Shown here one piece after another: positions 2,499 to 51,984 of a stretch of DNA of 64,000 bases. The stretch spans positions 62,001 to 126,000 of IMG/VR virus record IMGVR_UViG_3300045125_000168. The stretch is one strand, 5' to 3'. The notes under the pieces are model-generated. The model worked only from the letters and a program-made list of their open reading frames with translations. It did not search any database and was not told where the DNA came from. The position numbers and the translations under genes are program-made. Positions within the stretch are counted from its first letter, which is position 1; each line of letters opens with the position of its first letter.

Positions 2499-2525
2499 TT
2501 ATCGGTATTTCTTTGTGAAAACTAA
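2499..2525 (-). promoter_or_regulatory. sigma-28 (FliA)-type promoter
   Basis: TTAG-N15-ACCGATAA, intergenic, pointing at ORF 2434. Confidence 0.65.
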
Positions 2526-2845
2526 ATGGCTATCTTTTTTGAATTATTTCGGTGGCTTGTGGCCTATACCTTGGCAAAGGCGTGGGCAAACCTGCGGTAG
2601 CGGTCTTGGCTGAATCCGATAATCTCAGTCGAAAGCTCCCCTTGGTCCCAGAATTGAAGGACGGGAAAACGTAGCCATTCGCTCGCAACCCGCGCCTCTT
2701 TAAGCTCGGACCACGAGAAAAGGAAAAGGGGACGTTGGCTTTTTTTAGCTCGCTTTGAGCCAACAACGTCCACTGCTCATTCAACTCACCGACCAGCACA
2801 ACAAGGTGCTGATCGGTGTCGATGAGATCAAAGTAGGCTTGATCT

Positions 2846-4034
2846 TTAGAGCGTGTCATCGTCATCCAACATCGGGGCTGGTTTGCGACGAGCCGCTGCT
2901 GCGGCCATTTGTTTCTTCTCGGTTTCTGCTTTGCGCATCGACGTCACTTTGCAAGCCGAAAAGCAATCGACGTTCCCTGCGAAGTCACCGAACGCCGTTG
3001 GACAGCCCTCGTAAGCTGCCGCTTGCGCTTCAGCAAGGCTCACAGGGCTCATAGCAGCCTTCGCTCCAGGACGAGGGCGGGAGCTTCATCTCTCACCGCA
3101 GCGACCTTCGCGGCCTTTAGATGTGCAGGGGCGGGAGAAACTTCCGTGTCCTCAGGGTCCACACCCAAAGTCAACCTCCGGTTGCTTCTGAAACTCTTGA
3201 AAGGAGGACGGTTTGGCAAACCCGTGCGAGGACTCTTCAGCCGCTGGTGCCGCTTGGTAGTAGCCTTGAGTGCGCAGGCTTCGTCGCATCTCTTCGCGGG
3301 ACGATGTGGTGCGCAGATATTCCACATGGCTGGTTTTTTACCGTCGCCTTGCAGTTTTTTCTTCGAGCCATCGGGGTATTTTTGGACGATGACGTTTTGC
3401 AACGCTTCCTTGTCCAACGCCACGCTCTTGGTATCGAGTGAAGCCGAGTACATGTTGGCAGGCTCTTGGGACTTATCAAATTTAATAAGCACCAAAAGCT
3501 CCGCGATCGGGATGGGTCACAGGAAAATTAGCCATTGGCTTTTTCAAGTCTTGGATGCGCTTGAAAAGCCGAAGCCGACATCTCCAGAAGGAAAATACCT
3601 TGCAGGCTGTTGACCGTATCACCGTCAACATTTTCTTCAGCGAGGTAGTGGAACACGTTCATGTAATAGCGATACTGACCGACGATTTTGGAGCCGCCTG
3701 TACCGACTGTGCCTGCGAGTTGCAAACGGCAGCAGTCGCACACTTCTTCGCGGTTATCGACAAAATCATCTTTTTGCGAATCCCAAGCATGGCAGTATTC
3801 ATAATACCGCTTGCCGTTTTTTGTCGTCACCGCATGGCGGTAGTCAGTCCACACAGGACCAACGGGACGTACTAGCTGCCAATCTTTGTCTGGAAACTCA
3901 AATGGTTTAACGAAATCGCTCCAACGGTGACGCTCATCAAGAGTAGGCACACTGTCGATTTCCTTAGCATCCCAGCACTCCTTAGATGTTTTGTTTTGAC
4001 GCGATGACGTGTGAGCAAAATGCTCTTGTGTCAA
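2846..4034 (-). CDS. gp32-like single-stranded DNA-binding protein (frameshifted)
   Basis: H..C..CDCC putative Zn ligands, YRYYMNVF strand, acidic C-terminal tail MLDDDDTL across pieces 3528-4034, 3049-3495, 2846-3052; replication-gene context. Confidence 0.55.
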
Positions 4035-5411
4035 TCAAGCAATCTAACACAATCAGGTGCTTTCATGTTTGAAAAGTTCTGAAGTTCTATTTGATCTGGC
4101 AAAATATCTTGCGCTAAGTCCACTAAGTTATTGAGGAGCGCAAACAGCTTTCTCTTGAGAGGCATTCTTTCGAGTGTCAAACGCAGAACTTCTTTTTCTT
4201 CCTCTTGCACTCTGGTTTCTCTTGCGGAAGGGTCTTCCAAACGGTCTTTAGGCGTTGTCACTTGGCCCACGTCGTCGTTGGAATAAAGCCTTTTTTCCAG
4301 GGAATGGGGATTTTGCAAAGCGATCTGCGAATAGATCTCCAAAACCTCAGCCAAAGGAATGTCATAGGCTTCGGCTAACTCTTGAAGAGAGCGCACGTCA
4401 CGGCCTTGCTTTCTGTGAAAGTCTTTTTAAACGCTTCCAGTTCGCGGTACTTTTGCCAAGACTGATAAGGCAACGCCACGAGGTTGTAGTTCGAGAGTTG
4501 GTAATAGATCTCGTAACGAATCTCGCGCTCGGCAAAGGTCGGAAAACTCAGCTGACATGCTGGGGGCATACTTCGGCAATGGCTTTCATCAAGCCACATT
4601 ACAACCGTAGTTAAACGTGTCGAAAAATTGCCACGCTTGGTTGCTTGCCGCGATCTGCTTTGTGAGAGTGTAGACGAGGCGAAGATAGGGGCGATGATAT
4701 CCAGTGTTTGATCTGAACGGTCTGTTCATAGGTTTCGATCAGAAGGTGAACCATCATAAACCAGTGGGACCGAGGCCGTAAAGACCGAGTTCTTTCTCAG
4801 CCCACTCCTCAAAGACCACTTCAGCGTAAGGGTCGGTCATGAGCTTACCAACTCCCACTCTCGCCAAAGTTCTTGAGCTTCCCGAGCTTTTGCCTTGAAC
4901 CACCACTCCCAAACCGTGCGCGATGGATTGAGATCCCAAAGGGAACGCCAGATCTCGTGAGTTTTTGGGGCCTGATTTTTTGCCTGATACTCGGTCACGG
5001 CATACCAAAGGGCATGTGCCGCTCCCACCAAATTGGTGCTTTTGCTTTTTCCAACTTGATAGACGCTTTCTTCTTCGTTGACGTCTTCCATGATGTTAGC
5101 ATTTTCAGCTAAAATTTCTATTCTTAGAAGTGCCCGAAGCTACCGCTGAAAGCTGAAGCAACAAAAGATCCCAAAAGCGCGTCGAGGGCATCGGGCACAA
5201 AAGTAAGAAAAGAATCCATAGTGTAAGTGCTCTAGGTGTGAAAACAGTTCAAAGATGATTGCTGCGGAGCGGGCGGAGGCTTGAAAATCAGCGTTCTGAG
5301 TTCCTCATCACCCTCGATAAATTCATTGAAGTGCTTAGGTGGTAACGATTTCTTTTTACGGCCCATAAACCCACCTTCAAGATTATGTAAAACCAACTTG
5401 TGAGGGTCCGA

Positions 5412-5965
5412 ATGAATTTAACGATCGCTCAACTGAAAAGAATGACCCCAGCGAGTATTCGCAAGTATGCCAGTACCGGGGTGATGATTAACACAATTCA
5501 ACGTCGTGGAGTGTCCATGAAGGACGCTCCCGCAGTGCATTCTACAGGTGATCGGTGTCGTGCCTACTACTGTACTACAGCGATCTCGGAACAAATACAA
5601 CGAGAAAATCGGTCAAAAAGCGCAAAGGCGGGGAAGCCCTACGCCTAGTGTCATTAAAAACTTTGGAACTAAAAAGAGAACCAGAAAACTGGTTATTTAA
5701 AGATAATAGCCTTGTTTGGGTCCACTGTGATTGTCCTTATTTTTCTACACCTCGAAGTCGTCCTCGCCCGTCAAGGATGTAGTGAAGTTAAATTTAAGGG
5801 TGAGTCTGGAAAGAAAAACCCTGGGTGAAAAGACGTTCCAACGGAGCCCTACTGAAAGTCAGGAACCCGCAGGGAATCCCGTACTTGTGCAAGCATCTGT
5901 ATGCGACGGTTCAGCTTCTTCTGGCTCAGGATCGAGGAAAGAATCGTTATACTGGTCCGTTTTAG
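5412..5965 (+). CDS. SWIM zinc-finger protein (frameshifted)
   Basis: VHCDCPYF...NPQGIPYLCKHLYA, the CxC-n-CxH signature. Confidence 0.7.
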
Positions 5966-7439: not shown

Positions 7440-8545
7440 TCAATACGAGGTGGCAAGTCCTCTAAGTCCGGTTTTCTAGTCAAAAGGTCGCCTGCGAACA
7501 CTAAAAGACCCTGCCGCTTTTGCGCGTCCACGGTGTTCGGAGCGTGAGTCACCTCACGGGTCAAAAGATTGTAGAGGTCGTAACAGGTTATGGGCAGTAG
7601 AAGCTCGCTTAAACCACTGGGGCGAGGGCTTCTCATCCATATCCTTAAGACCATAGGCATCCACAATGTCCTTCCACCCTAAGGTGTCCTCAAGACGCTG
7701 CTTGAGTTCCGGGTCGCCTTCCCCATGCTCCCGGAAAAGCCCGAGGATGCTGCTGCGCACTTTCTTCGACCTCAGCCACACTGGCCTGCTGACGACGAAG
7801 CCGCGCAATCAACCGATCGACTTGACTCCAGTTCGGCTCAGGGGGAGACTGCAAGAACGTAAAGAAACTCTCCGCTCGTAGCTCCGAAGCGTTTTCATAC
7901 TTGAGCGGGTAGAGGTAAGAGTCTTCCGGCATATAGGTCAAGTTGGCACAGATCATCCGCTCCAGGGAGACATGGAACGCTGGGACCTCTTGTCCCCAAA
8001 TGCTATGACGAAACTCATAACCCCAGCGCCACACGGGTTCCGTGTCGCTTAGGACATCATGCTCCTCTTTAAGGAACATCAGATAGCTCACATGCCCGTC
8101 TTGAAGAGACGCCGATTTTAAAGCCAGAGGGCAATTAGAGCGGCCCAAATATTCTTCCAGGCGTTGATCGACTTGAATCGCCTCGGAACCTGTAAAGAAA
8201 AGGTTTTCTTTTTCGCTGAGACCTACAAGCCCCTGCTCCGGGTGTGTCACTGCACTGTAATACTTGTCACCGTTGACTTCCGAAAGCTGCTTGTGCAGGT
8301 AGGCCAGAACGTGACCGCGACCCGCGTTTTTGAGTTTCTTAGCAAACCCAAACGGCGCTCCTAAGTAGCCCACCAACTGCTCAAACGCACCATCATGGAG
8401 CGGAATGTGGCTTTCACCTTCAGCCAGACTGACAACCAGGGAGGCGTTGTCACCAAGTTCTAAGTCTAGTTGGGGAAGCTGAATCGTGCGGTACTCATAG
8501 GGGAAAACGCATCGGCTCTCAGTAGCATGGAAGCAAACCTCACAA
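7391..8545 (-). CDS. DUF932-like phage protein (frameshifted)
   Basis: HSIWG...LERMICANL motif and TCYDLYNLLT...TH tail typical of this family. Confidence 0.5.
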
Positions 8546-8679
8546 AACTCAAAGAAGGGGGAATTTAGGATAGCCTAGCACCCTTTTTGGCCGGAGGTCA
8601 CGCTTTCTTTTGACCTATTGCTCGGGTACTGTTTCCTGACGAGGAACACTCCTTGCAATGAGAGAGGTGAGGTTATTTT

Positions 8680-9234
8680 ATGTTTAAAAAAACGATGGTT
8701 AAGGCAGAAAAAACAAAGCTAAAAAAGAAAACTCCCCAGGATATTACTGATGCCCTGGTGTCTAGTTTTTTCGACACTTTGTACAAAAGATTGTCACAAG
8801 TCTCAGCCCCAAGTTATTTAGAACAGCTAGAGTTACTCACGGCGGATACTATCGATTTTAAGGAGAAAAAAAGGCAATTAGACTTTGGGAGAGAGGTCAA
8901 GGAAGCCAGACAGGCTCTTAGCAGAGTTTGACGAGATTTTTGCCGCCCATGTGACGAGTTTTGGAGTTATGTGCAAAAAGTCCAAGAGGCAAATTGGCCG
9001 TCCCACAAAAACGATGTGCGTGAGGCATGGACCCGTTGGGCTTCAAAAGCGGAACGCACGATCAAGCTGGTGCAAGCAAAAACAGAAGTGTGTATTGAAA
9101 ATTTGTCTGATTACAAAACACAGAAATATGAAAAAATGGCGCGTTTAAAGAAACTTAGAAAAATAAGCTCCGAACAACTATATCGAGCTTGGCTTAACAA
9201 AAAGAACCCTATCACCGGGGAAACACTAGACTAG
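8680..9234 (+). CDS. hypothetical protein (frameshifted)
   Basis: GAGG RBS; two consecutive pieces 8680-8931 and 8971-9234. Confidence 0.45.
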
Positions 9235-10157
9235 CTAGATTCAATACGACCCCAAGCGTGTGCGAACTCAGCGAGCGGGAGATCCCCAGGATCTTTCGCT
9301 CGCGTATTCCAATAGAAAACCTTGAGGCGCTCTTTCGGGAGATACATTCCGAGATCACCGATCACTTGCCGCGTGACGTCAAACCCCGCTTCGTCCTTGT
9401 CAAAGGCCAATACCAGAGTGCCTTGAAAACGTGGCAGGTATTCGACTAAAAATTTGTGCTTCCAAGCGTGTCCCCATTGGCCTGTTCCCAAAATCGCACC
9501 GACCTCGACTTTGCCCTCTAAGCCCATATCCCGCAGATGCTGGTAAGAGCGCAGCGCATCATAAGGCCCTTCGACTAACATCAAATAGTCAGGCCAAATG
9601 CATCGTCGCAAGGCAGGTGCAAACCCAAGAGGGAAAATATCAGGACGCTTTAAGTCCAACCCTTTGGCGTTGACAGCTTTGGGCATCTGCTCCGACGAAA
9701 GACGCAGAAACACTTGATTCGGTGCGCCCTGAGTGCTGGCCAAAGTCAAACCAATGCGCGGCAACCGCTCAGATCCCACGGTGCAAAGCTCAGGGTTAAA
9801 GCGAGCTTGAACCGTAAGAGCTTCCAGGGTCTTTGCCCTGATTTCTCGCCAACCCCAGAACCTTGGCCAAGCCTCTCGTGTCACAACTTGTGTCTCAGGC
9901 TCTTGAGACTCTGACAAGAGTGTCTTTTCAAAACTTTCTAAAAACAAAGCCTGAGGTTTGAACTCAAAGGTCTGAAGCTCGCCCTCATGATGAAACTTGG
10001 CAAGCTCGGTCTCAGGTACTCCCAAGGCTTTAAAGCCCTCGACGGGAGAGACTCCTTTGTTTTTCCCGAAGTGACAACTCCAACAAAAGAAGACCCCAGA
10101 CTTGCAATAGATATTACACGAGGGATCTGCATCAGTATGCCAAGGGCACCGGATCAC
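9231..10157 (-). CDS. DNA primase (Zn finger + TOPRIM)
   Basis: CPWH.D..PSC...FFCWSC zinc finger; VEGPYD and FDKDEAG TOPRIM motifs; KDPGD. Confidence 0.88.
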   Translation of the reverse strand: MIRCPWHTDADPSCNIYCKSGVFFCWSCHFGKNKGVSPVEGFKALGVPETELAKFHHEGELQTFEFKPQALFLESFEKTLLSESQEPETQVVTREAWPRFWGWREIRAKTLEALTVQARFNPELCTVGSERLPRIGLTLASTQGAPNQVFLRLSSEQMPKAVNAKGLDLKRPDIFPLGFAPALRRCIWPDYLMLVEGPYDALRSYQHLRDMGLEGKVEVGAILGTGQWGHAWKHKFLVEYLPRFQGTLVLAFDKDEAGFDVTRQVIGDLGMYLPKERLKVFYWNTRAKDPGDLPLAEFAHAWGRIESS

Positions 10158-19398: not shown

Positions 19399-22300
19399 TT
19401 GGTAAGTAAAAGGGAGCCATCTGCCTGGAGAAAAATTTTGGATCAGTCTTTCAAAGCTCGCGCTCGAAGAGAGCGAGCACGGCAGCTTGAAGCCGTGCGC
19501 AACTCGCATTCCTTGGTAGCCGTGAATTGCAAGGTGACTTGCTCGCAAAGGCGCGCTGCTCCCAGGTTGGAGCGCATCAAAGGTTGTACGGGAAAGAGTT
19601 TGCCGAGGTCTTTTTGTCTTCGATGCTCCGACTATGATGGAGGTCGAAGAGGGCCTTCCTCTGGTCGGTGGTGGTGGAGCGATCTTCCGTGACCAAATTT
19701 TGCGCAGGTTCACCCAGGAGACTCCAGGGTTCAGTTACCGCTTGACTTATTTGATTCGATCAATCTTGCCTGAGGACACGTCCAAGCGGTTCACCAAGAG
19801 AGAGTATGATGCCTGCTGGACCCATTTGATGACAGATTTGGGCCTGCATCGGCCACGCTTGATTGTCGCGTTTGGCACAAGCGTTTTCCAATATCTCCGG
19901 GGCAAGGCGATCAATAAGCGTGAGATCGACACGCTGCTGGATGGCAGCACCAGCATGAACTCTTTGCGCAAGCATGTTTTTAGCTTGAAACTTTTGGAAG
20001 ACTATGAACCAGACCTTCTCGTTTGCTACAGCCCCTCTTTCGTCCTCTCAAACCCAAGTGCGACCCGATACATCGAGGAAGACAGTCAACGAGTCGTCGC
20101 CACCGCAAAACGCAAGTATTCCGCTGTTGTTACTTCTGCTCGCGTTAGTTCTATTGAAATTAAAAGAATAGACCTTTTAGACACGGAAGAAAAAGCACTG
20201 AATTTTCTTACGGCTCTTGCGCAGGGCGAGTTGACAAGCGGGACACCCGTGGCGTTCGACACAGAAACGATGAATTTGAACCGCAGGTTTAACAACGCCT
20301 TCCTCTCGTGGCAGTTTTCCTTTGTGCGCGGTGAGGCCGTGGTGATTCCGATTGAGCATCCTGATAAGCCGCTATTTGAGCCCGTGGAGTCAAAAATCCG
20401 CTTGGTGGAAGCAGGTCGTCAGCTTTTTAACGCTTCCTCTAAGAAAAGTCGGATCTCGATGTTTGTGGCTCACAACGCGAAGTTTGATCTTTCTGTGTTG
20501 TATGGGCTTTTGGGTATTATCCAAAAAATCCTGACGCACCTTTTTGGTGGTGTACTCAAAACGCGATGCATTGGTTGGATGAAAACCGCAAAGGGCTTGC
20601 GCGTTTCATGGAGTCTGGGGACAAACCCTACAGTCTCAAAGACTCTCGGCAAAGAGCTTTTTAACTTTCGTTACCGGGCCGAGCATTTGGAAAAAGGTCC
20701 GATGGTCATTTGATGGACCTGGCCGATTGATGAGCTTGCCGAGTACGGTGGAAGCGATACGATTTTGACCTTGGCTCTTCAGGCCGAGCAGTTGCGGCTT
20801 GCCGATGAACAGCCTGACGCGGAGCAAAAGCAAAACTCCTCAGGTTCATGCAATTTTATTATTCTAAGACTAACCGTAGCCTCGCTTTGATGGAGTGCAA
20901 CGGGCTTTATGTGTCGAATGAGCATTTGAGCTACTTGCAAGGTGTAGACTCACCCATTTGGAACCGTATTACAGAGATCAAGCATCATCTTTTGCAGGAG
21001 AGTCCTGAGGTCTTGGAGTTTCGTCGTCGCTACTCTCACAAGCTCACTTCTAAAACGACGGTGGCTTATGATGACCTTTGGGCCGAAGATTCGGGGCCTG
21101 CGGAGATTGTCGATCTAGACATCAAAAGAAAACCCACCGCGATGCTTTTTACCTTGATTTTTTAAAACTAGAACCTTTGGAATACAGTCAAAAAACCAAA
21201 AGAACCTTCTTTGATTCTGGGTTTTTAGAGCATTACCTCAAGCTCGAAAAACTACCGCACGGCCCCTGGGGTGAGACCTTATTTGGACCATTACGCCCAG
21301 ATGGTGGAAGACCCGAAGACTGGTGATCTCGTTCCACCGCCTAATCCGCTTCAGTTAATCAGCGAGTTGGCCAAGCTGGAAAAGCTCGCAGCGGGTTATC
21401 TCAACTCGATTCAAAAGCTGATCGACGATCAGATGGGTGACTGTCGGGATAGTCGCGTTCGAGCTTCCTTCACCCGACCGGAACGGATACGGGTCGGTTA
21501 AGTTCATGCATAGCCGCAGGTTCCTTGGTTGAGGTGGTGCGTGATCTTGGTCAGTTCCCCAAAGGGATTCCGATTGAGGACGTAAAAGCGGGAGACCTTG
21601 TTTATTGTTACGATAACAGCGAGGTTCCGCAATTAACTTTAAAGCGTGTGCTTTGGTCAGGCAAACACAGGGCACCGAAAAGTTTTACGGTTGCATTGGG
21701 AGTCTGCTATCGATGGTTCCCGAGGTCACCTAGACTTGACTCCTGAGCATGGCGTTCGTCTCCTCGATGGTAGTTATGTCGCTGCTGAATGTTTGCAGCC
21801 TGATGATCGTATCCTTTGCTTAAGTCGTAAAACGCATTCCCGCTATAGCCGTTTGTATTTTTACGGTTGCTCGAAGGGAATTTTAGATCACGTTTTCGTG
21901 CATCGAACTCTGCGCCCTGAGCCTTTGGTCCCGGAGAAGTTGTTCATCATCGGGATTTGAACTTTTTAAATAATCGACCTGAAAATCTTTTGAAGACTGC
22001 GTGGTCTGAGCATTTTAGATCGAGTGGCTTGGACAAAAAAGGCAGAAGAAAGCGTAAGGTCGTTCCCTTCACACCAATATCAGAAGCGGTCAATCATCGG
22101 ATCGTTCGTATTGAAGAGCTTGCCCGTTCGGTCGCAGTTTACGATCTGCACATTGCAGATGTTAATAATTTCATCGTGAATGAGCTTTGTGTCCATAATT
22201 CTTCTCCGAACTTCCAGAATCTCCCTGCTGGACGGAATAAAGCGGCTAAGGAAATCAAAAATATGTTTCAGGCCGAGCCTCCGTCCAAAAGATGGCGAGA

Positions 22301-23170
22301 GGGAACGTGTCTGATTCAAGTCGATTATGCGGCAGCGGAAGTGTTTTGGGCCGTGAACTTTTCCAATGAGCCTGAGTTGGTGAAGTTTTTAAATGCCTGT
22401 GGGCAAGACTTGGCTCGGGCTTATGAGAACAGTGATTCTTTGCCTGATGCAGAGTTTGAAAAGATCATCCTCTCGACGGACTTTCACAAACGCACGGCCA
22501 GTTTGATGTTTGAGATACCGCCTGAGCAGGTGTCGAAGTCGATGCGGCAGGAAAGCAAGTCGATCACGTTCGGTCTTTTGTACGGTAAGACCGTGCAGGG
22601 GTTAGCGTCCGACAACGGCTGGACGGTTGAGGAAGCTGAAGCCAAGATGCGGAAGTTCTTTTCGGCTTTCCCTCGACTGGAGCGTTGGCCCAAGAGCAGG
22701 TGGAAACGGCTCGTCGCAAGGGGTATGTGGAAACCATGATGGGCCGCAGGCGCAGGTTGTCGCACTTTTATGCGACCAAGCAAATGAAACATGCGAGCGA
22801 GGCCGATCGCAAAGCCATCGAACTCACCGATCCAGGGCCAGTCTTCGGATGCGGGTATCATTGGCTTGAACAATTTTGTGGAATACGTGTTGGTCCACGA
22901 CTTGGAGCGCAGGTGGCTGGTTGAGAACGTGGTCCACGACTCGATCTTATTTCAGGTGCCGATGGGCGATGTGAGCAAAGCGTTGCCGATCATCAAGGAC
23001 TGCCTGACGACGGGTATGCGGAGTATATCGAGCGGGTGTGGGGTGTGCAGGTGCCTGTGACCTTGCGGTGTGATTTTGAGATCGGTCTCAGGTATGGGGA
23101 TTTGCACGGTTGGGACCAGAGGGCGAAGACCTTGGGTCCAATTTTGGGCAAAGTTCTGATGATGCCATGA
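19399..23170 (+). CDS. polA: family A DNA polymerase with N-terminal uracil-DNA-glycosylase-like domain and 3'-5' exonuclease, intein-containing (frameshifted)
   Basis: UDG4-like C..C...DAP...PLVG.GG...PRLIVAFG; exonuclease FDTET and HNAKFD; TGRLSS/SPNFQN; motif A DYAAAE; motif B RQESKSITFGLLYG; NSPIQG; motif C VHDS. Confidence 0.92.
21507..22199 (+). mobile_element. intein with HNH homing endonuclease in the DNA polymerase
   Basis: TGRLSS|CIAAGSLV...LTPEH...VHR...VVHHRD.NFLNNRPENL...VYDLHIADVNNFIVNELCVHN|SSPNFQN. Confidence 0.92.
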
Positions 23171-23248
23171 AACTTTGGAAAGTGGAAGATAAGTTTCAGT
23201 CTGTTGTGGTGAAAAATACAAAACCCCAACGGCATTGGACTTAGTAAC

Positions 23249-23950
23249 ATGGCAACCAGAAGAAAGCCCAGGGCAAGCAAGCCTGAACCGTCTGCTGCTT
23301 ACTTTACAAGATGATCTGGTCCGACCCGAGCAAGCCAACGGCCCAACGTATTCACCCCTACTGCCCGATGATTGATGCCCATGGCATGAGGCGCTACTCT
23401 CGACATTGAGCAGCACGGTGTCCACCTTTGGATGGGTGGAAATGGAAGAGGACACCTGCAGCAGCAAGCGATCGATTGGATTTTTGCGCAGAGAACTTCG
23501 CTCCCACTCGCAAGTCCCACCTGACTCTAGTGATCTCGTTCCCCTAGTGCGGAAACTTGACCACATGCTTTGCGTTGATTGACGTGATGCAAGGGTCCGC
23601 GGTTCCGGTTCACACCTTAGGGGTCGGTCAGATTGCCTCGTGCGGTTTGCTGCTGTTCATTAGTGGGGCTCGTGGGCATCGGACATTGACTCCCAACACC
23701 AGCATCCTGTCACACCAGTATTCTTGGGGCGCTTATGGGAAGAGCATGAGCTTTTTGCTCAGGCCAAGGAGTATGAGTTGACGGCGAAAAGGATGATGGC
23801 CCACTGACAAACGGTGTACGGGGATGTCCGAGGTGAAGATTCGTAGTACCTCTTACCCGCATAGGATTTCCTCTCTTGGCTCTCTGCAGCAACCGAGGCC
23901 AAGGCGTTAAATGTTTGCGATCGGGTTCATTCTACTCTTGATATGAATAA
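23249..23950 (+). CDS. clpP: ClpP-like protease subunit (heavily frameshifted)
   Basis: FALIDVM...VHTLGVGQIASCGLLLFISG..G.R...PNTSILSHQ. Confidence 0.8.
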
Positions 23951-24385
23951 GTTAGGAGATACTCAAAAAATTTGAAGGCGGCAGGGATGATACTGATACC
24001 AGCGTGGTTAGTTCTTTTTCTGTGTGCGGTTGTGCTCTTTGGTTGTGCATTGGATGTCTTACAATCTAGGTGCAAAAAAGACGGTTATCTGATGGGGATG
24101 AAAGCGGGTGTTTTCGTCCGAGAGATAGGAAGAACGAAGAGGCGGTCGTGAACTTTAAAGTCGTAGCACGGTGGTGGTAGGTCTTGCGTCGGTCGGATGC
24201 GCAATCCATGAAGGGTCTCAGCAGGTTGCGAAACCAGTTTGAGCGACATGTGGTAGTGGCTGGTCGAATGCGATAGGTCCCAGCGGCTCCTGCTTGTGGT
24301 GTGGAGTTTGCCTCAACTGCGAGGATGGGGCCTCTTATTTTTGCGTGAACGAAGTCGTGGTAAAAGCGAGAACAGAGGTAGGCAA

Positions 24386-25020
24386 ATGGGCCACGCGCAA
24401 CCGCGATTGGCAGTGATGTGATGCGTCAGTGTTACGAGCGTGGCTGGATCACGACTCCGTGATGGGCAACATAATATCCCCGAGGCGGCCTTTAGAGGCA
24501 CCGTTGCCAATCACGTGCACATCACCCCCTCTGGCTTTCGCAAAGACGACGATTTATCCTGAGAACGCGATGAAGCTCCGGTTTCAAGAGCCTAACGGGT
24601 CTTTGATCTGGGAGAGTGGGAAGCCTTCGGGCGAGTTGCACATGCACTGGCTTTTGCAGCGTACGTGTGCCCTCGACGAGGGCTGTTGTCCACGTTCATG
24701 CGACTCATATTGTCGCCGCGATGTATGCAGGTTTCAACTTGCAGGATTTGGCCAAGGAGTTTCCTGAAGTTTTTCGTTACACCCGCGTTGGTCCGAACGT
24801 GGCCAGTTTACCTGCGACCAGTGTTGAACTAGGTGATGCCACGGCTCAGGCTCTTGGCGTTTGTCCGACACGGGCAAAGTCGATTACGACATTGTTGGTC
24901 AAGATCGTCATGGTGTGTGTGCTGTTGGAAAGCATCCGTGGGATGCTTATGAGCACGTCGAACGCTTGAATCATGTGTGTGAAATTGTCTTAGCGGGTTC
25001 TATCCACAAGTTATCCACAG
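24386..25020 (+). CDS. class II aldolase/adducin-family protein (frameshifted)
   Basis: DGNI, ITPSG, KPSGELHMH, VVHVHATH, HGVCAVG...AYEHVERL. Confidence 0.85.
25000..25019 (+). promoter_or_regulatory. tandem DnaA-box-like pair
   Basis: CTATCCACA-AG-TTATCCACA; the second matches the TTATCCACA consensus exactly. Confidence 0.4.
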
Positions 25021-32007: not shown

Positions 32008-32034
32008 TAAGCAATCGCAAAAAAACGTCGATAA
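32008..32034 (+). promoter_or_regulatory. sigma-28-type promoter
   Basis: TAAG-N15-GTCGATAA. Confidence 0.7.
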
Positions 32035-32094: not shown

Positions 32095-32764
32095 ATGAAA
32101 ACCACCACCATCATCAGCTTAGTGTTCACCTTAGTCGCTTGCGGTCAACAACCAAACTATTCGGAACCAACCTTGACGGACAAGCAAGACAAAAAAGCAG
32201 AGAACACGGATACTCAAGAAAATAAAAAAACAAATGACGTGCTCCCCCCTCAGGGCATTGACGGATATATCTCGAACGCTTTTGACCTGACAGTTGATGG
32301 CGAGCGTTACACCGATAGCGAGGATTTCTACACCAAAGAGCTTGATCGATTGACGGAAAGTGCAGTCGAAGCTGGTTATGAAGACTGGAACCTTGACTTC
32401 GACGCTCAGATCGGTCTGGTTGATCTCAAATACGGCATGACGGTTTTCGTCGGCTCACCTAGCCGCAAAGGTTTCGCAGGTCAAACCACTGTGGCTTCGG
32501 ACGCGAGCTTCCATGTCCATGTGCCCGGAAGCCGCACGGCAAGAGAACTACAACATTCGTGCTGTCAAAAAAATCAACCTGACGCTGACACCTCCAGAAG
32601 GTAGCGACGAGAAGCCTGTGCGTTGGTGCTACAACTTCAGTGCCGAAATCGGTGAGGTTCGTGTTGATGGAGAGCCAGTAGTTCTCAGCACCTTCAAGAC
32701 CAAATTGACCAAGTATGCTTGCTCGGTCGCAGACCAAGGAATCGCAATCCCACCAAAAAAATGA
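32095..32764 (+). CDS. lipoprotein (frameshifted)
   Basis: AAGGAG RBS; MKTTTIISLVFTLVA-C lipobox. Confidence 0.7.
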
Positions 32765-32789
32765 GTGGGTTTTCAACCAAGGAGTTTTT

Positions 32790-32912
32790 ATGAAAAAGAA
32801 AGCAGCGAAGAAGAAAGCCGCACCCAAAAAGGCGGCACCCAAGAAAGCCAAGAAAAAGGTCGCTAAAAAAGCGGCACCTAAGAAGAAAGCCAAGAAAAAG
32901 AAAGCTAAGTGA
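32790..32912 (+). CDS. 40-aa Lys/Ala-rich histone-H1-like peptide
   Basis: AAGGAG RBS; MKKKAAKKKAAPKKAAPKKAKKKVAKKAAPKKKAKKKKAK; hairpin downstream. Confidence 0.7.
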   Translation: MKKKAAKKKAAPKKAAPKKAKKKVAKKAAPKKKAKKKKAK

Positions 32913-35030: not shown

Positions 35031-35057
35031 TAAGAACCTCTGCTTTTGTGCCGATAA
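35031..35057 (+). promoter_or_regulatory. sigma-28-type promoter
   Basis: TAAG-N15-GCCGATAA (consensus -10). Confidence 0.75.
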
Positions 35058-35798
35058 GACCCTATATATGGGGGTTACTATGGGCACTATCAAAAGCCAA
35101 GCTATCCACCTCGCTGAATCCCTTATGAAAATTGACCGTGTGCGCGTCGAGCACAGGCTGCGAGCCTTTCCAGCCTACTTTCAGGACGCCTCACGGATTT
35201 TAGAGTCCCGTTGGACGGGCTCGAAAGTCTCGTGCCTCTCGTGCGGGGGGCCGACCATTACAGTCCTGTATGACGGGGTGGAAGTCTGCAAATATTGCGG
35301 TGAGGGGGTATAACCATGTGGAAGCTATGCCTGGACTCTCTCTGGGGTTATCTTGAGGACGAGAATTTCTCGGGTGATGAGTACGTCTGGCGTACCGATG
35401 TCACCGATGAGGAGCTTGAGAACATGCCTAGATTCCTCAAGCGGCACCTGCGAGGACGTATCGACCAGTATGCCGTTGCTATCGAGGGCGAAGGGCATAT
35501 TGTCATCCGTCAGGCCCAGTCTGGGAACCCGATCATCATGCTCTACCGGATTGGTGGGTGACCTATGGCTCGCCAATCACAAAAGCACTGCTGGCTCAAA
35601 GGTGTCAAAGAAGTTTGGCTTCAGACTTTTTGGGATGTGTACTGGGTTTCAATTCGATAGCTCTCTCGGTGTGATCTGGCCACTGAATAAAAAATTCCGC
35701 GAATTAAAAGAGATGATTCACGAGGACCAGATAGCCTATGAGGTTGTGCAGATTTATTTCGACGATTATAACCGCACCAGACTCACGGAAAACTAACG

Positions 35799-37716: not shown

Positions 37717-38479
37717 TTATACCAAGACCAAGATGGCGGTAACGCCTCTTTGGTATAGGGCAGAGACTGGTGGTTGTTTGGCGTGTTTCTCTCGTCCGAA
37801 GTAGTCTAGCTCTTGCGGTACGAGGTCCACCTGGACCCCCTTGAGTATTTTTTTGAAAAGCAAGACACCCATCCATTCGCTGTTGGTATGTCCTGTCTCG
37901 ATCAAAGCCTTGAAGCCAGAGGTTTTACCGCTTTGGATTTTCTCGCCTATGATGTAGCAATCCGCTCCTGAGGCGAGGGCAAGTTCTGTGACCATACCTC
38001 CAAGACCTGAGCAGATCACCACGCTTTTGATGATGCGGTTTGGTTGATCGCAGTAGGTTTCCCCATCGATAGTTTTCGAGCCAGAAAAACTGTGCGACTT
38101 TTTGCACTAGATCTTGGAAGGGCATAGGGTCGATCTCCCCGTGCCAACCGAGAGTCCCATCGAAGTGTTTGTATGGTGCTTTTAGTTGCAGGTGGTCGCG
38201 CCACTGATCGTTTAGTCCCCCTTCGCAGCAATCTAGCGCAGTGTGGAAGATAAGCTGAGGAACGCTCGTCCTAAAAGGGTGGTGGCTGATTAAGAGGTCG
38301 TAGCCGTTCTTTTGAAAGTAATCGACTACATGCGGTGTTGCGGTCACGCAGTAGAGGACTTTTTTGACGTCTTTATTGTAGTCCTCGATATTGTATTCAC
38401 CATAAGCCTCGCCACGAGTCCAGGCGATTTCTTCAGGGCAGGCGCTTTTTGCTACGCGAATTAAGTCAGCCATTTTCAT
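37717..38479 (-). CDS. NIF3-like dinuclear metal-centre protein (frameshifted)
   Basis: DLLISHHPF, HTALD, GHTNSE. Confidence 0.85.
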
Positions 38480-38506: not shown

Positions 38507-38533
38507 TTATCGGAAGTTTCCCGAGAAAGCTGA
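38507..38533 (-). promoter_or_regulatory. sigma-28-type promoter
   Basis: TCAG-N15-TCCGATAA, 28 nt before the NIF3 start. Confidence 0.65.
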
Positions 38534-38584: not shown

Positions 38585-40409
38585 TATCTGTCGCTTGCAA
38601 GCATAGTTTTTAGCTTTCGCAGGCAAGTAGTCGTTAGGTCTTGCACGTCGCGCACGATAATGTGGTCAGGATAGAAATGTTCTAACGGCATTTGACTCAA
38701 TGCCTATACCAACGCACTCGATATTGTCACGGATAAGCTCGCGCACGGCTTTTTTTAGATCAGCGTTGAGGATCGATGAAATGCCATCGGACGCTGGGGT
38801 CCCGTCTGATAGAACAATCATGATCTTACGATTGGCTGGGTGATTTCTTAGCCGTTGACCAAAAAACCGAATAGACTCTCCATCGCAATTAGCACCATCC
38901 GAAAATAGCCTTGCGATAGGCGTGAGATTTCGACTAACGAAGGGTTTGAAAATGTGATGCTGCAATGATTCAAATACCCGGTTGAAAAATGGATAAACTA
39001 TCTACGTCTACCGGATGCGGAATTGTGTATGTGTGAAAACCACCAACCTCGAAATCTATATCTAGCGATGTCAGGGCTTCCGCAAACGTCGCAGCGAGTA
39101 ACTTGGCTGTAATAATTTTCGAGCCCTCCATGGACCCAGACATATCGATCACAAGTTGAATCGCGACTTTGCGGGTTTCCTCACGCACACGGATTTTGAA
39201 CGGTGTGCGATAATTTTTGTCCACGGCAAGGCGCGTCAGGGCTTTGCGGTTGAGAATACCGCGCTCTTGTTCCATCAGGACCCTGCGATTTTCTTTTGCG
39301 ACGAGGATGCGGTCTAGCTCCAGTGCGAGTTTTAAAGCTTGGGGTCGCACCTTTTGCTTGATCGCTTGATAATCGGAATATGTCTCTTTGTACTCATGGA
39401 CTTTATCGAACTCCGTGGTATACGGCACATGCTTACGAGCATCGTCAAACTCTCGCTCTTCTTCGGTTTGTTCAAGTTCAAGGCGCTCTTCGCGCTCTTC
39501 TTCAAAATGCTCGGCTAGTTTCTCGTCCATGAATTGATGGATGTCTATGGGTTTTTGATCTTCGTCTGACTTCCTCATCACGAAGAGCTTCCGAGTTTAA
39601 GGTTCCGTCATATTCGCGGTCGCGTTGCTTTTTGCTCTGCCTTTTTTGTCTCCTGCTCGTCTGCCTTGTCTCCTCTTGGTCTTGGTCTTGGTCTTGGTCT
39701 TGGTCTTGGTCTTGGTCCTCCTCTTGGTCTTGGTCCTCCTCTTGGTCTTGTTCCCCTTGGTCTTGGTCCTCTTGGTCCCCCTGGTCTTGGTCCCCCTGGT
39801 CTTGGTCCTCTTGGTCTTGGTCCTCTTTGTTCTCTTGTTCCTCTTGGGCTCTGTCGATCTCACGCAGAATCCGACCGCAGATATCGATGATGTCGGATGT
39901 GTTTTTGCCGAGCGTAAAGATTTTGCCAGACTGACGACACGGGATGTAAAAGAGGCTTGGTGTCAGGGTCTAGCCTGGGCTTTTCGCCTTGCATAATAGA
40001 CCGCACACCGAGACAGACGCGATTCATGAGAGATATCTCATCCCATTTTTCATAGGGTGATTTTTTTCCACTTCGCGTTCAAAGGCTCTAAATGCAGCTT
40101 AGTGCCTGGAAAAGTCTCCCCTATGACTTTCTCAATCCGGCTATCCTCACAATGATTGGTGAGCCAATGAGTGCAATTTGTTCTGACATCGCCTTAGCAC
40201 GGCAAAGTCGGTGTACAGGACATGGGCTAGTTCATGATCCAGATAGCCCTGGGTGTCGAACAATAGCTCGGCTGGGGCATCAGGGGCCAATGCGGGAAGC
40301 ACAATTTTTTCCCGTCCGTGTATGCCTGGGTGCCCTGAAAGACGACCTGGACATCGTGTTGGCCCGATATCGCCCTCGCTACTTTCTCCAATGATCTTGT
40401 GCCCTTCAT
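38585..40409 (-). CDS. CobT-like VWA-domain protein (frameshifted)
   Basis: VVFQGTQAYTDGK N-terminus, acidic linker, MIDAS motif IDMSGSM, N.DGESI, IVLSDGTP, VGIGI. Confidence 0.85.
39672..39830. repeat. (CTTGGT)n-type tandem repeat encoding the DQDQEE acidic linker of the CobT-like protein
   Basis: Minus strand GACCAA repeats with GAG/GGG inserts. Confidence 0.85.
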
Positions 40410-40438: not shown

Positions 40439-40465
40439 ATATCGGTATTTACGTGGCAAACTTTA
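40439..40465 (-). promoter_or_regulatory. sigma-28-type promoter
   Basis: TAAA-N15-ACCGATAT upstream of the CobT-like gene. Confidence 0.7.
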
Positions 40466-41071: not shown

Positions 41072-41098
41072 TAAAGTTTTATTTTGATCGTCCGATAA
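41072..41098 (+). promoter_or_regulatory. sigma-28-type promoter
   Basis: TAAA-N15-TCCGATAA upstream of the CobS-like gene. Confidence 0.75.
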
Positions 41099-41143: not shown

Positions 41144-42166
41144 ATGCCAAGAGGCAAGGCTGAGACAAAAGCACCTGTAGCTGCGAAAAAAGCAACAACG
41201 ACTACCAATACCAATACTCTCATGGGTATCGAGTTGCCGGTCAGGACGGGGCTTTCGCCTGCACAACAAAGATTTGTCCCAGCGATTGACGCCAAATATA
41301 GTTTTCCCGGAAATCACCTTCGATGTCGTGAGCGACATCCTAGAAAATCGTTGCGTCCTGACAACAGGCCATGCAGGTACAGGCAAATCCAGTCTATTCG
41401 AGCAGATAGCGGCTCGGATGAATCAACCCTGTGTGCGGCCTGTGATGAATGGGCAAATGACCACCTCAGAGCTTTTGGGTGGCCTCCTGGTGCGAGCAGG
41501 AGAGACGGTTTTCGTCGATGGCACCCTGGTGAGGGCTATGCGTGAAGGGATGTGGGTGATTATCGATGAGATCGATAATGCCGATGCGAATATTTTGTGT
41601 TCGCTCAATACCGTCACAGAACCCGTGACCGAACACAAAAAAGACCGTGATCTGATTCTGAAGGAAAATGAAGGTGAGCTTGTGGTGGCCCACCCTAATT
41701 TCAGAATTTTGGCTACAGCAAACTCGGCTGGGTGCATGGAGCAATTTAGATCTCTTTACCCTGGCCGTAACAGGCTTGATGTGGCTTTTCTCTCGCGCTT
41801 TAGTGTGTATCACATCGACTATCTCCCGGCGGAGCAAGAAAGCGAGATTGTCCAGTCTAAAACAGGAATCCCTGCAAAAATTGCCGCTAACATGGTTATC
41901 GTCGCCAACCAGCTTCGCACTGCCTTTGCCAACGGAGAAATCTCTGCGCCTTGCAGCACACGTCAAATTTTTGAATGGGGTCGCTTGATTAAGCGGCATA
42001 TAGAACGGGCAAAGAGTCAGTTGGATTTTGATGATCTTTCGGATAAAGACCGGGAGAAAACATTGAAATCAATCGTGCAACACGCAGCTTCCCTAGCTCT
42101 TAAAAGCAGGTGAGCTTTGAAGACCAAGAAGTAATTGATCGTCTCATTCTGATGACTTTTGGATAA
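41144..42166 (+). CDS. CobS/MoxR-family AAA+ ATPase (frameshifted)
   Basis: Walker A GHAGTGKS, Walker B IIDEID, HPNFRILATAN, LD.AFLSRF, STR. Confidence 0.9.
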
Positions 42167-46798: not shown

Positions 46799-47882
46799 TC
46801 ATTGAACAATTAGGCCATTTCCAGTGTACTCGGGATAACCTTCGATGCGAAGGTCGAAAATTGTGTGAATTTGATCGATCGGTTTAGACCTTACGATTTT
46901 AGTCCAGGAGCAAGCGGTCATTTGCCATAAAAGGTGCCGCAGGAATGCGAGTTCATCTTCTACAAGGTCTTCGACAGGCGTTTCTAAATGGCAGTTCAGG
47001 ACGTCGATGACGAGAGAACGGGGTACTTTTTCACTCGCATACCGATAGGCCGAACGTGCATCTTGCACTTTTTCCACCAGGGACCAGCGGGTCATGTGAT
47101 TTTGCCCGCAGATCACCGTCAAACGACGAATATACTCCCGCAGTATTTTTGCTGCGGGCAGAGTCTCGACCCGAGACGGTTCTCCAATCCAATCGAGGCC
47201 GATCAAGAGGTCAAAGGCTTGGTACGACTCGCGCTTTATTTTGACAAAATAAGAGTCGCTGCGCTTTTGAATAGCCACTTGGATACCAAGGTTTTTGTAA
47301 CAGGCATTTAACCAGATTGGCTTGGTCGTGCTTTGGTATCCTCACGGCAGCGGTCGAGGCAACAGGGCAGCGAATCCCGAAGTTCAAAAAAGACCTTTTA
47401 GAAACGCGATCTGCCCCTCGCGGTCTACCTGCCCGATCATAGGCGTGTCGATCTCGATGGTGGTGCCAATAAAATCATGAATGATTCTTTCCCAATCATT
47501 CAGATAGGGAAAATCCCACTCATGATTGGGGATTGGGAGCTTTGCAAAAAGCCCTGTCTCCCTGGGCTTGCCCAGCCATTGACCCACATCTAAAAGAACA
47601 GGCGGCTGAAAAAGAGGGCGTCCGTCCACAAGGCTAAGGATGGGGTGGTCCTCCACACACTTGAGCGTGTCCCCATCCTCTGTTTCGATCTCATGCAGGG
47701 AGAGAAAGCCCTGAAGAGGTCGGTCACCCGTCGCGGGCCATTTCGGGTGGCGATTTCGAAGTCTTCTTTGAAAAAAAATTATGAGTCCAACCGATCTTAT
47801 CGCCAACAATGGCCTCATGCAGAAAATCAAATCGGACAAGACCAAGGGAGGAAGGAATCAAAGTGTCACCAGCCAAACACAT
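46799..47882 (-). CDS. free-standing intein/Hint-domain protein with LAGLIDADG remnant (frameshifted)
   Basis: AAAGGA RBS, ATG, then CLAGDTLIPSSLGLV; IETEDGDTLKCVEDHPIL; AFLKGLF; ends IFDLRIEGYPEYTGNGLIVQ-stop. Confidence 0.75.
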
Positions 47883-48609: not shown

Positions 48610-48621
48610 GTTGCAACCTCC

Positions 48622-50570: not shown

Positions 50571-50820
50571 CGTGGTTTTTCCACCGTTTGACAACGGTTC
50601 CTTGGTTAAGAGGTGGTCATATCCGAACTACCAGTAACCCAGAGGACACGATTCATTTTGCGAGCGGGCTTTGATTCGGACGAAGCAACCACACTCGCGG
50701 CATACGTCCTTTTTTACGTCAAGTTTGTCGCAACCAAAACACGCGAGTAATCGAGACGTGCGAAGGTTGACATCCGCTTCCTTCCAGTGAGCAAGAGCTT
50801 TGAAAAACGATGTGATGCGC

Positions 50821-51849
50821 TTAATAAGTTTCGCCATGGTTTGAACGGGCCTTAGACTGAAAGATGCCTGCAACTTTGTCCCAAAAACCTTTGCGCTTTT
50901 CGAGAGCCTGCAATAATTCCGAATCTTTCACAGGATGTGTTCCGTGTTTAGAAACAGCGACCGCAGCAGCAGTGTTCGCAAGGTGAACTGCCTCTTCCAA
51001 AGGACATGCAGAACCGAGTGCAAGCGCCATGACCGCAGCGACGGTATCACCTGCCCCTGACACGTCAAACACCTCTTGCGCTACAGCAGGTAAATAGATG
51101 CTCGGTGCTTGTCTGCGCACGAGCACCATGCCTTCGGCCCCAAGCGTGACGAGGACGTTTGGAAAGCCGAAAATGTCTCGCAACTGCTCACCGAGGTATT
51201 CTCCAGTGACTTTCGAGTGCGAGTCGATTTTGAGCGCATCGCAGGCTTCTTTGCGGTTCGGGGTGATAAGAGACGCTCCACAATAGCGCGTGTAGTCGCG
51301 ACCCTTGGGATCGACGATCACCGGGATTTCATGTTTTTGTCCAAGCTCGATAATTGCCCGACAGGACTCAGGGGTAAGAACTCCTTTGCCGTAATCGCTT
51401 AAAAGCAGCGCGTTGGGGAGGTTGGGTGTTTGAAGAGACTCCTCGATTTTTCCCACAAGACTCACCCGAATCTCGTCCGAAAGTGGTTCGGTGGTTTCGT
51501 GATCGATACGGCAGATCTGGTGGCCTTGGCAGGTGATGCGGGTTTTGCGGGTGGTCATGCGACTATCATCAAAAACAAACAGTGGGATCACCAAATCGTC
51601 GTTTTTAAGCATATTTTTGAGCAAAAAACACGTCTCATCCATCCCGACAACGCTGAATAGATGGGCAGAGGCACCGAGCCCGGAGACGTTCATCGCTGAA
51701 TTTGCGGCACCACCAGGAACGCAAAATTGCCGACGTACTTCCACGACCGGAACCGGAGCTTCTGGTGAAATGCGCTGCACTTCTCCGTCCACATACTCGT
51801 CAAGCATCACATCACCGATCACTGCGACGGTTGTTTTTGTTTTTGCCAA
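50821..51849 (-). CDS. rfaE: RfaE/HldE domain I-like D-glycero-D-manno-heptose-7-phosphate kinase (PfkB family)
   Basis: IGDVMLDEY..G.V.RISPEAPVPV, GGAAN, SDYGKG, VDPK, TPNRKE, DVSGAGDTV. Confidence 0.9.
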   Translation of the reverse strand: MAKTKTTVAVIGDVMLDEYVDGEVQRISPEAPVPVVEVRRQFCVPGGAANSAMNVSGLGASAHLFSVVGMDETCFLLKNMLKNDDLVIPLFVFDDSRMTTRKTRITCQGHQICRIDHETTEPLSDEIRVSLVGKIEESLQTPNLPNALLLSDYGKGVLTPESCRAIIELGQKHEIPVIVDPKGRDYTRYCGASLITPNRKEACDALKIDSHSKVTGEYLGEQLRDIFGFPNVLVTLGAEGMVLVRRQAPSIYLPAVAQEVFDVSGAGDTVAAVMALALGSACPLEEAVHLANTAAAVAVSKHGTHPVKDSELLQALEKRKGFWDKVAGIFQSKARSNHGETY

Positions 51850-51957
51850 GGCAGCATAGAAAAATTCCCCCTTAGATCAAAAAATCTTTCGCTTCTAGGC
51901 ACTTACAGCGTCTTTTGGAAAAATGTTCTGTTATTTTAGCAAATTAAAACTTTTTTC

Positions 51958-51984
51958 TCAGTGAAAATCAAAAGTCTCCGAAAA
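51958..51984 (+). promoter_or_regulatory. weaker sigma-28-type promoter
   Basis: TCAG-N15-TCCGAAAA upstream of 52019. Confidence 0.5.

What the first reader, a model, noticed from the sequence alone, without database searches (positions are those of the whole stretch)
2499..51984. Phage regulon built on sigma-28/FliA-type promoters
Seen: seven intergenic, correctly oriented sites with an exact 15-nt spacer. They are 2499-2525(-) TTAG/ACCGATAA, 32008(+) TAAG/GTCGATAA, 35031(+) TAAG/GCCGATAA, 38507-38533(-) TCAG/TCCGATAA, 40439-40465(-) TAAA/ACCGATAT, 41072(+) TAAA/TCCGATAA and 51958(+) TCAG/TCCGAAAA. Known: the FliA consensus is TAAA-N15-GCCGATAA, and in Bdellovibrio FliA drives free-swimming attack-phase genes. 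Inference: the phage couples its early, non-structural genes (CobS/CobT, NIF3, lipoprotein plus histone-like peptide, ligase) to the host flagellar/motile-phase sigma factor, or encodes its own sigma-28-like factor. This would restrict or time infection to motile or predatory cells.
Basis: partly seen in the sequence, partly recalled or inferred. Interest (0 to 1): 0.85.

Follow-up and report, generated by a model that had tools for sequence, protein, structure and literature searches.

The report
Flagellar-sigma-type promoters in a jumbo phage
A giant uncultivated phage and its relatives put textbook copies of the bacterial flagellar (sigma-28/FliA) promoter in front of some of their operons, which suggests phage gene expression tied to the host's motile state, although who reads these promoters is not settled.

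Summary
All seven sites exist as written, each 6-65 nt upstream of a start codon on the correct strand. The strict two-block pattern T[ACT]A[AG]-N16-CCGATA[AT] occurs 6 times in the window against 0.28 in shuffles. It occurs 8 times in 131 kb of the contig against 0.51, and 7 of those 8 lie sense-upstream of genes.

Relatives give the strongest support. In four related contigs (CobS 58-84% identical) the cobT/cobS divergent spacer carries the same two promoters; TAAAGyTT and CCGAwrA are kept while the spacers have diverged. Cellular cobS-like loci (1.4 Mb) have none.

The window is part of a 351-kb metagenome contig (236-kb IMG/VR phage) with many frameshift errors. It belongs to a purely viral family of about 440 aa that resembles primary sigma-70, not FliA.

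No FliA-like gene was found in the 137 kb sampled. The host is unknown; one gene tree points weakly to Bdellovibrionota.

Best reading: genuine sigma-28-class promoters heading a subset of operons, most likely read by host FliA. This is not proven.

The parts
2499..2525 (-). sigma-28-like promoter TTAGTTTT-N11-ACCGATAA, 65 nt before the GTG of small ORF 2192-2434
1947..2434 (-). two small ORFs (80 and 82 aa) downstream of the 2499 site; no family match
4031..5366 (-). phage-encoded sigma-70-family gene, broken by at least 6 frameshifts; collinear with the intact 444-aa homologue P0035
31914..31937 (+). terminator-like hairpin with T tract, just upstream of the 32008 promoter
32008..32034 (+). 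weaker sigma-28-like site TAAGCAAT-N11-GTCGATAA
32050..32912 (+). predicted lipoprotein (signal peptide followed by Cys) and a 65-aa Lys/Ala-rich peptide (32715-32912) downstream of the 32008 site
35031..35057 (+). sigma-28-like promoter TAAG-N15-GCCGATAA; an exact match to the Bdellovibrio form TTAAG-N16-CCGATA
35068..35796 (+). three small ORFs (about 80 aa each) downstream of the 35031 site; no family match
38507..38533 (-). sigma-28-like promoter TCAGCTTT-N11-TCCGATAA, 28 nt before the NIF3 start codon
37925..38479 (-). NIF3/DUF34 gene, frameshifted near its 3' end
40439..40465 (-). near-consensus sigma-28 promoter TAAAGTTT-N11-ACCGATAT for the cobT-like gene; conserved in 4 relatives
38970..40409 (-). 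cobT-like gene (weak CobT_C match), frameshifted, containing a hexanucleotide-type repeat at 39671-39855
41072..41098 (+). near-consensus sigma-28 promoter TAAAGTTT-N11-TCCGATAA for cobS; conserved in 4 relatives
41144..42166 (+). cobS (AAA_5/CbbQ_C) with two frameshifts; 96% identical to the intact P0001
51958..51984 (+). weakest site, TCAG-N15-TCCGAAAA, in the divergent gap between the PfkB kinase gene (-) and ORF 51990-52712 (+)
51990..52712 (+). 240-aa ORF with a Lys-rich N-terminus downstream of the 51958 site; no family match

Best explanation
The sites are genuine promoters of the sigma-28 (FliA/SigD) class: -35 TAAAGyTT, an 11-12 nt gap, then -10 (G)CCGAwrA.

They head a subset of operons in an uncultivated jumbo phage (cobS, cobT-like, NIF3, a lipoprotein operon and several ORFan operons). 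The trait is inherited across a clade of related phages.

The most likely reader is the host's own sigma-28 RNA polymerase holoenzyme. That would make these operons expressible only in cells whose flagellar/motility (or, in Bdellovibrionota, attack-phase) programme is on.

The phage's own sigma, encoded at 4031-5366(-), is sigma-70-like and probably serves other promoters that have not been identified.

Shown: the motif, its enrichment, its position and orientation, its conservation, the existence of a phage sigma gene, and the kind of sigma it is. Inferred: that the sites fire, where transcription starts, and which sigma reads them.
For: Enrichment and position:
- The strict pattern is enriched more than 15-fold over dinucleotide shuffles, and 7 of 8 matches are sense-upstream of genes.
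- Matches to the independent 16-nt E. coli consensus: window 2 vs 0.03. One site with both blocks perfect and a 12-nt gap lies 2.7 kb left of the window. Three more sites lie to the right, at window-equivalent 86609, 99372 and 102178.

Conservation:
- In L285, L286, L288 and L005 the cobT/cobS divergent spacer carries both promoters, with the blocks kept and the spacers changed.
- The cobS to DUF6744 gap also carries one in L005, L286 and L288.
- The 80 metagenome cobS loci hold 13 sites with up to 2 mismatches, against 1 in shuffles. The 79 cellular cobS-like loci (1.4 Mb) hold 0.

Other sigma candidates:
- Sigma-70-type hexamer pairs are not enriched (25 vs 20.6; TTGACA and TATAAT are not enriched upstream).
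- The phage sigma family matches RpoD best (E 1.5e-11), then SigF and SigA. No FliA appears in the top 60 PDB hits, and hhalign to E. coli FliA gives only 47% probability over regions 2-3.
- The Foldseek top hits shown are almost all E. coli sigma-70 chains.
- Its C-terminal domain is short and lacks a canonical region 4.2 recognition helix, which argues against it reading a conserved -35 block.
- The sigma-28 consensus is the same in E. coli and Bdellovibrio, so phages moving between hosts could keep it.
Against: - There are no transcript data.
- The host is unknown, so it is not known that it has an active FliA.
- Only 137 kb of the 351-kb contig was read, so a phage FliA-type sigma could lie in the rest. 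Some cultured jumbo phages carry group-3 sigmas annotated fliA or SigF.
- The phage does encode a conserved sigma whose specificity is unknown, and no second promoter motif was found for it.
- Depending on an alternative host sigma is risky for a lytic phage, and no precedent turned up in the two full-text literature searches run for one.
- Five of the seven window sites have poor -35 blocks.
Confidence: 0.5

Rival explanations
1. The phage's own sigma (window 4031-5366, family of P0035) reads these promoters. On this reading they form a phage-autonomous middle or late class that has converged on the sigma-28 consensus.
For: - The sigma gene is conserved across the clade (at least 60 clusters at 45-85% identity, all viral or metagenomic).
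- It sits in a conserved replication-gene neighbourhood.
- The sigma-28-like motif is the only recurrent promoter-like motif found.
- Phage sigma cascades are a well-known strategy (own knowledge: SPO1 gp28, T4 gp55).
Against: - The protein is sigma-70-like, not FliA-like.
- Its C-terminal domain lacks a normal -35 recognition helix.
- Identity with the FliA consensus in both blocks and in spacing would have to be coincidence.
- The 21 kb around the sigma gene in the distant relative L301 has no such sites.
Confidence: 0.2
2. A second, FliA-type sigma encoded in the unsampled 214 kb of the contig reads the promoters.
For: - Group-3 or FliA-annotated sigmas occur in cultured jumbo phages such as Microcystis phage MaAM05 and Erwinia phage Hallingskeid.
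- 61% of the contig was not examined.
Against: - None was found in 137 kb by precomputed Pfam or by my own sigma HMM.
- None was found in about 700 kb of relatives' cobS neighbourhoods.
Confidence: 0.15
3. The sites are not promoters. They are operator sites of a phage DNA-binding protein, or they mix a few real sites with chance matches.
For: - With up to 3 mismatches the motif is not enriched.
- An unbiased dyad search ranks TAAA-N16-CCGA only 4th, and the result is not significant after multiple testing.
- The weaker sites (32008, 51958) could be chance.
Against: - The sites show strict orientation, fixed spacing and position just upstream of ribosome sites.
- The blocks are conserved while the spacers diverge in four relatives.
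- The motif is absent from 1.4 Mb of cellular control loci.
Confidence: 0.08

Closest known systems
Class 3 flagellar (sigma-28/FliA, SigD) promoters, TAAAGTTT-N11-GCCGATAA
   Same: Both blocks, their spacing, and their orientation and distance to genes. The best sites match 14-16 of 16 consensus positions.
   Different: They sit in a phage genome in front of cobS, cobT-like, NIF3, lipoprotein and ORFan genes, not flagellar or chemotaxis genes. A frequent -10 variant is CCGAAGAG. No cognate FliA has been identified.
Bdellovibrio bacteriovorus attack-phase FliA regulon (TTAAG-N16-CCGATA; PMC3627812)
   Same: Sigma-28-type promoters used far beyond flagellar genes. The 35031(+) site matches that consensus exactly, and 3 of the 7 window sites have G at the fourth -35 position, as there.
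   Different: The host is not shown to be a Bdellovibrio. The only link is a single-gene (RmlA) grouping with an Oligoflexia species.
Phage-encoded sigma factors that direct middle or late transcription (SPO1 gp28 and gp33/34, T4 gp55, phiEco32 gp36; named from my own knowledge)
   Same: The phage encodes a conserved sigma-70-family protein.
   Different: The protein is about 440 aa with a sigma-70-like N-terminal part and a truncated region 4. It has no homologue in 50,697 deposited phage genomes, and it is not linked to any promoter by evidence.

Membership tests
sigma-28/FliA-class promoter | -35 TAAA(GTTT) and -10 (G)CCGATAA separated by 15 nt (11 nt between the octamers) | tested here: met
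   Two window sites have up to 2 of 16 mismatches; the other five keep the -10 block but have weaker -35 blocks.
sigma-28/FliA-class promoter | Lies upstream of a gene in sense orientation, more often than chance | tested here: met
   7 of 8 strict matches in 131 kb
sigma-28/FliA-class promoter | Conserved as a functional element in orthologous positions | tested here: met
   cobT/cobS spacer in L285, L286, L288 and L005
sigma-28/FliA-class promoter | Transcription starts a few nt downstream of the -10 block and depends on sigma-28 holoenzyme | not testable with these tools
   No transcript data; uncultivated phage
sigma-28/FliA-class promoter | A FliA-type sigma is available (host or phage) | tested here: inconclusive
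   No FliA-like gene in 137 kb of the contig. The host is unknown.
phage-sigma-dependent promoter class | The phage encodes a sigma factor | tested here: met
   window 4031-5366(-)
phage-sigma-dependent promoter class | The sigma's DNA-recognition regions fit the motif | tested here: inconclusive
   Closest to RpoD, not FliA. Short, atypical region 4. The specificity cannot be read from sequence.
Bdellovibrio attack-phase regulon (host-coupled) | The host belongs to Bdellovibrio or a close relative | tested here: inconclusive
   The RmlA tree places the phage clade with Pseudobacteriovorax (Bdellovibrionota) at 100/89 support, but this is one gene in an unresolved polytomy. The tRNA and cobS scans of GTDB genomes gave nothing.

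The most novel reading that the evidence does not exclude
A whole clade of uncultivated jumbo phages wires part of its gene set to the host's flagellar sigma factor, while carrying its own sigma-70-like factor for the rest. Infection would then be gated by the motile state of the cell. If the hosts are Bdellovibrionota, it would be gated by the predator's free-swimming attack phase, the only phase in which a phage can reach the cell.
Probability: 0.35. Interest if true: 0.8.

Novelty: new variant of a known kind. Interest (0 to 1): 0.62.

Why it matters
Phage promoters are normally housekeeping-sigma promoters or are read by a phage-made sigma or polymerase. A conserved set of flagellar-sigma promoters in a phage lineage would be a new way of coupling infection to host physiology (motility, attack phase).

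It is directly testable with sigma-28 holoenzyme and a 160-bp spacer.

It also exposes a large, purely viral family of sigma-70-like proteins with a truncated region 4. What promoters these recognise, and how they interact with the host polymerase, is unknown.

Tried and rejected
- Stop-codon recoding as the cause of the short ORFs. Rejected: the interruptions are a mix of TGA, TAA and TAG with frame changes inside conserved motifs, and relatives have intact genes.
- A codon-usage gene map. The signal was too weak. JGI gene calls were used instead.
- A position weight matrix that included the spacer. It overfitted.
- De novo k-mer and dyad searches of upstream regions. They had low power and revealed no second promoter motif.
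- Host assignment. Megablast and CobS tblastn against deposited phages found nothing closer than 30%. An exact tRNA-Ser pattern gave 0 hits in GTDB genomes. CobS in GTDB genomes hit only Burkholderia-type cellular loci at about 40%. The ESM Atlas gave no usable taxa, and cluster listings carry no organism names.
- An IMG/VR scan for the motif, hoping for entry points into the same genome.
- A sigma-family scan of IMG/VR. It returned only this genome.
- Co-occurrence of sigma or cobS with multi-hit IMG/VR contigs. None was found.
- PHROG and Pfam searches of the downstream ORFs. They gave no matches.
- The recurrent AGGTCTTTTT element as a second promoter. This is unresolved.
Full report
WHAT THE WINDOW IS

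The window is positions 63,760-127,759 of JGI metagenome contig Ga0494335_066 (351,605 bp). Positions 1,760-238,189 of that contig are filed in IMG/VR as UViG_3300045125_000168. Its gene content is that of a large tailed phage:
- DNA polymerase A with an intein, a primase, and a 5'-3' exonuclease;
- PhoH, MazG, cobS/cobT and NIF3;
- tail-fibre 'Collar' domains and an amidase;
- HNH and GIY-YIG homing endonucleases, and many ORFans.

No deposited phage is close: megablast finds nothing, and CobS reaches at most 30% identity.

The ORFs are short because the assembly is full of frameshifts, not because a stop codon is recoded. In the polymerase, cobS and the sigma gene, the reading frame changes inside conserved motifs and the interrupting stops are a mix of TGA, TAA and TAG. 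Relatives have the same genes intact. 'Intergenic' was therefore judged from the JGI gene calls plus homology to those intact relatives.

THE OBSERVATION

Each sits 6-65 nt upstream of a start codon on the same strand, and most of these starts have a ribosome-binding site.

Three tests show more than chance:
- The published consensus TAAA-N15-GCCGATAA with up to 2 mismatches gives 14 hits against 4.5 expected. Allowing 3 mismatches loses the signal.
- The 16-nt E. coli form TAAAGTTT-N11-GCCGATAA with up to 2 mismatches gives 2 hits against 0.03.
- The strict pattern T[ACT]A[AG]-N16-CCGATA[AT] gives 6 hits against 0.28 in the window.

I walked the contig rightwards to record position 194,703, giving a clean 130,944-bp merge. 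The strict pattern occurs 8 times there against 0.51 expected (0/200 shuffles).

Of those eight, five lie in the 5% of strand-positions that are sense-upstream of called genes (p=1.5e-5). Two more are the cobS and cobT promoters, whose real 5' ends the gene caller missed. Only one site (11580+) is antisense inside a gene.

More sites lie outside the window:
- window-equivalent 86609(-), 99372(-) and 102178(-);
- TAAAGTTT-N12-GCCGATAA, with both blocks perfect, 2.7 kb to the left.

Sigma-70-type hexamer pairs are not enriched.

CONSERVATION

CobS homologues led to relatives at 96-58% identity and to 80 more distant metagenome loci.

In L285, L286, L288 and L005, cobS and the cobT-like gene are divergent neighbours about 160 nt apart. 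In every one the spacer holds two outward-facing sites: TAAAG[T/C/G]TT-N11/12-GCCG[A/T][A/T][A/G]A towards cobS, and T[A/T]AAG[C/T][T/G]T-N11-[G/A/T]CCGA[T/A][A/G][A/G/T] towards cobT. The spacer and flanking bases have diverged. The window has the same pair, separated by an inserted DUF3846 gene. The next gap (cobS to DUF6744) carries a further site in L005, L286 and L288.

Across the 80 metagenome cobS loci (679 kb) there are 13 sites with up to 2 of 16 mismatches, against 1 in shuffles. They are concentrated in 9 loci, several of which carry two near-identical copies. In 79 cellular cobS-like loci from GTDB genomes (1.43 Mb) there are none.

The element is therefore a lineage trait of a group of phages, not a property of cobS loci or of base composition.

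WHO READS THEM

Searching six-frame ORFs with a small sigma profile turned up a weak hit at 4034-4426(-). Pfam gave a sub-threshold Sigma70_r3 match there. Four pieces in three frames map collinearly onto sigma regions 2.1, 2.2, 2.3/2.4 and 3-4.1.

An exhaustive HMMER search found an intact 444-aa homologue, P0035, at 71% identity. tblastn shows the window gene spans 5366-4031 on the minus strand, with at least 6 frameshifts.

What the family looks like:
- It has at least 60 clusters of 430-455 aa, all from metagenomes or viral bins. Some are named 'specialized sigma subunit' by JGI.
- It is absent from 50,697 deposited phage genomes.
- It sits in a conserved neighbourhood with primase, RecA-like and clamp-loader-like genes.
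- Its profile matches solved sigma factors: RpoD E=1.5e-11, then SigF and SigA. No FliA chain is among the 60 best.
- hhalign against E. coli FliA gives only 47% probability, over regions 2.2-3.1.
- An AlphaFold model (pLDDT 69.7) finds mostly E. coli sigma-70 chains as the best Foldseek matches, aligned over nearly the whole length.
- The C-terminal domain is four short helices ending in a conserved P..EL..FF. It has no basic recognition helix of the region 4.2 type.

So the phage does have its own sigma, but it is primary-sigma-like and looks poorly equipped to read a conserved -35 block.

No FliA-like gene appears in the 137 kb examined, whether by precomputed Pfam or by my profile. None appears in about 700 kb around cobS in relatives. 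However, 61% of the contig was out of reach, and some cultured jumbo phages do carry group-3 sigmas.

WEIGHING

Matches of 14-16 of 16 positions to the universal FliA consensus, in both blocks and at the same spacing, recurring in many phages, are hard to explain unless a FliA-type sigma reads them.

My estimates:
- host FliA: about 0.5;
- the sigma-70-like phage factor: 0.2;
- an unsampled phage FliA-type sigma: 0.15;
- not promoters at all: under 0.1.

That the sites are functional sigma-28-class promoters, whoever reads them, I put at about 0.8.

HOST

There is no direct evidence:
- An exact tRNA-Ser pattern and CobS gave nothing useful in GTDB genomes.
- The phage's RmlA is 68-73% identical to many bacterial enzymes.
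- In a maximum-likelihood tree of the 120 best hits, the phage clade falls in a 9-member group (support 100/89). That group contains Pseudobacteriovorax antillogorgiicola, the only named member, of phylum Bdellovibrionota, class Oligoflexia. It is separate from the Xanthomonadales-dominated majority.

This is one gene in an unresolved polytomy. In B. bacteriovorus, TTAAG-N16-CCGATA precedes 92 of 140 attack-phase promoters (PMC3627812), and site 35031(+) matches that form exactly.

SCOPE OF THE 'REGULON'

About 12 sites were found in 137 kb holding about 250 called gene fragments. Most intergenic regions, including those around the replication genes and the sigma gene in relatives, lack the motif.

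The downstream genes are cobS, the cobT-like gene, NIF3, a lipoprotein plus a Lys/Ala-rich peptide, a GIY-YIG/HTH protein, and ORFans without any family match. No ligase was found. 'Early' is untested.

NOVELTY

Two full-text searches found no paper that links phage promoters with sigma-28. I file this as a new variant of known kinds (sigma-28 promoters; phage use of alternative sigmas). It is of real but unproven interest.

Noticed in passing
window 4031-5366 (-): Frameshift-broken gene for a sigma-70-like protein of about 440 aa. It belongs to a large, purely viral or metagenomic family with a truncated region 4, and no deposited phage has it.
   Followed up: yes
window-wide, e.g. 19634-23200, 41144-42166, 37925-38479: Genes are riddled with +1/-1 frameshifts, while relatives have them intact. 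This is most likely a noisy (long-read?) assembly rather than pseudogenes or recoding.
   Followed up: partly
window about 21507-22199 (+): Mini-intein inside the DNA polymerase A gene. It starts right after the TGRLSS motif (CIAAGSLVEV...) and ends ...VHN/S. Pfam gives a weak Intein_splicing match.
   Followed up: partly
window 39671-39855: Degenerate TGGTCT/TCCTCT tandem repeat (10 overlapping copies of a 50-nt unit) inside the cobT-like gene. On the coding strand it would give an acidic/Gln-rich low-complexity stretch.
   Followed up: no
window 32715-32912 (+): 65-aa Lys/Ala-rich, histone-H1-like peptide directly after the lipoprotein gene. It has no family match.
   Followed up: partly
window 19606, 31959, 40465, 40527 (+); 47396, 55096, 63354 (-): Recurrent AGGTCTTTTT element in intergenic positions. 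An extended form, TTGC(N)CGAGGTCTTTTTGTC, occurs upstream of both the DNA polymerase gene and the DUF3846 gene. It could be a second regulatory or promoter element.
   Followed up: partly
window 23061-24720: 1.66-kb stretch without any called gene and with positive GC skew. There is no Rfam match, and it is unexplained.
   Followed up: no
window 893-981 (-): tRNA-Ser(GCU) with a mismatch in the acceptor stem. An exact 49-nt core has no match in 185,579 GTDB genomes.
   Followed up: yes
contig level (record Ga0494335_066): The metagenome contig is 351.6 kb, but IMG/VR keeps only record positions 1,760-238,189.
   Followed up: no
window 25148-25492 (+) and L295:18666-18935: Two RRM_1 RNA-binding proteins are encoded by the phage. 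It also encodes two S8 peptidase loci, a CAP-domain lipoprotein, a ricin-type lectin and an Fe/Mn-SOD-like protein, an unusual load of secreted or host-like proteins.
   Followed up: no
window 46799-47845 (-): The ORFs read like intein or Hint-type pieces (...LSLHEIETEDGDTLKCVEDHPIL..., ...GNGLIVQ*). This was not checked.
   Followed up: no
L091 (IMGVR_UViG_3300044691_000458) 8120-9507: An unrelated 50-kb viral contig has three exact TAAAGTTT-N12-CCGATA matches within 1.4 kb. Sigma-28-type promoters may occur in other phage groups too.
   Followed up: no
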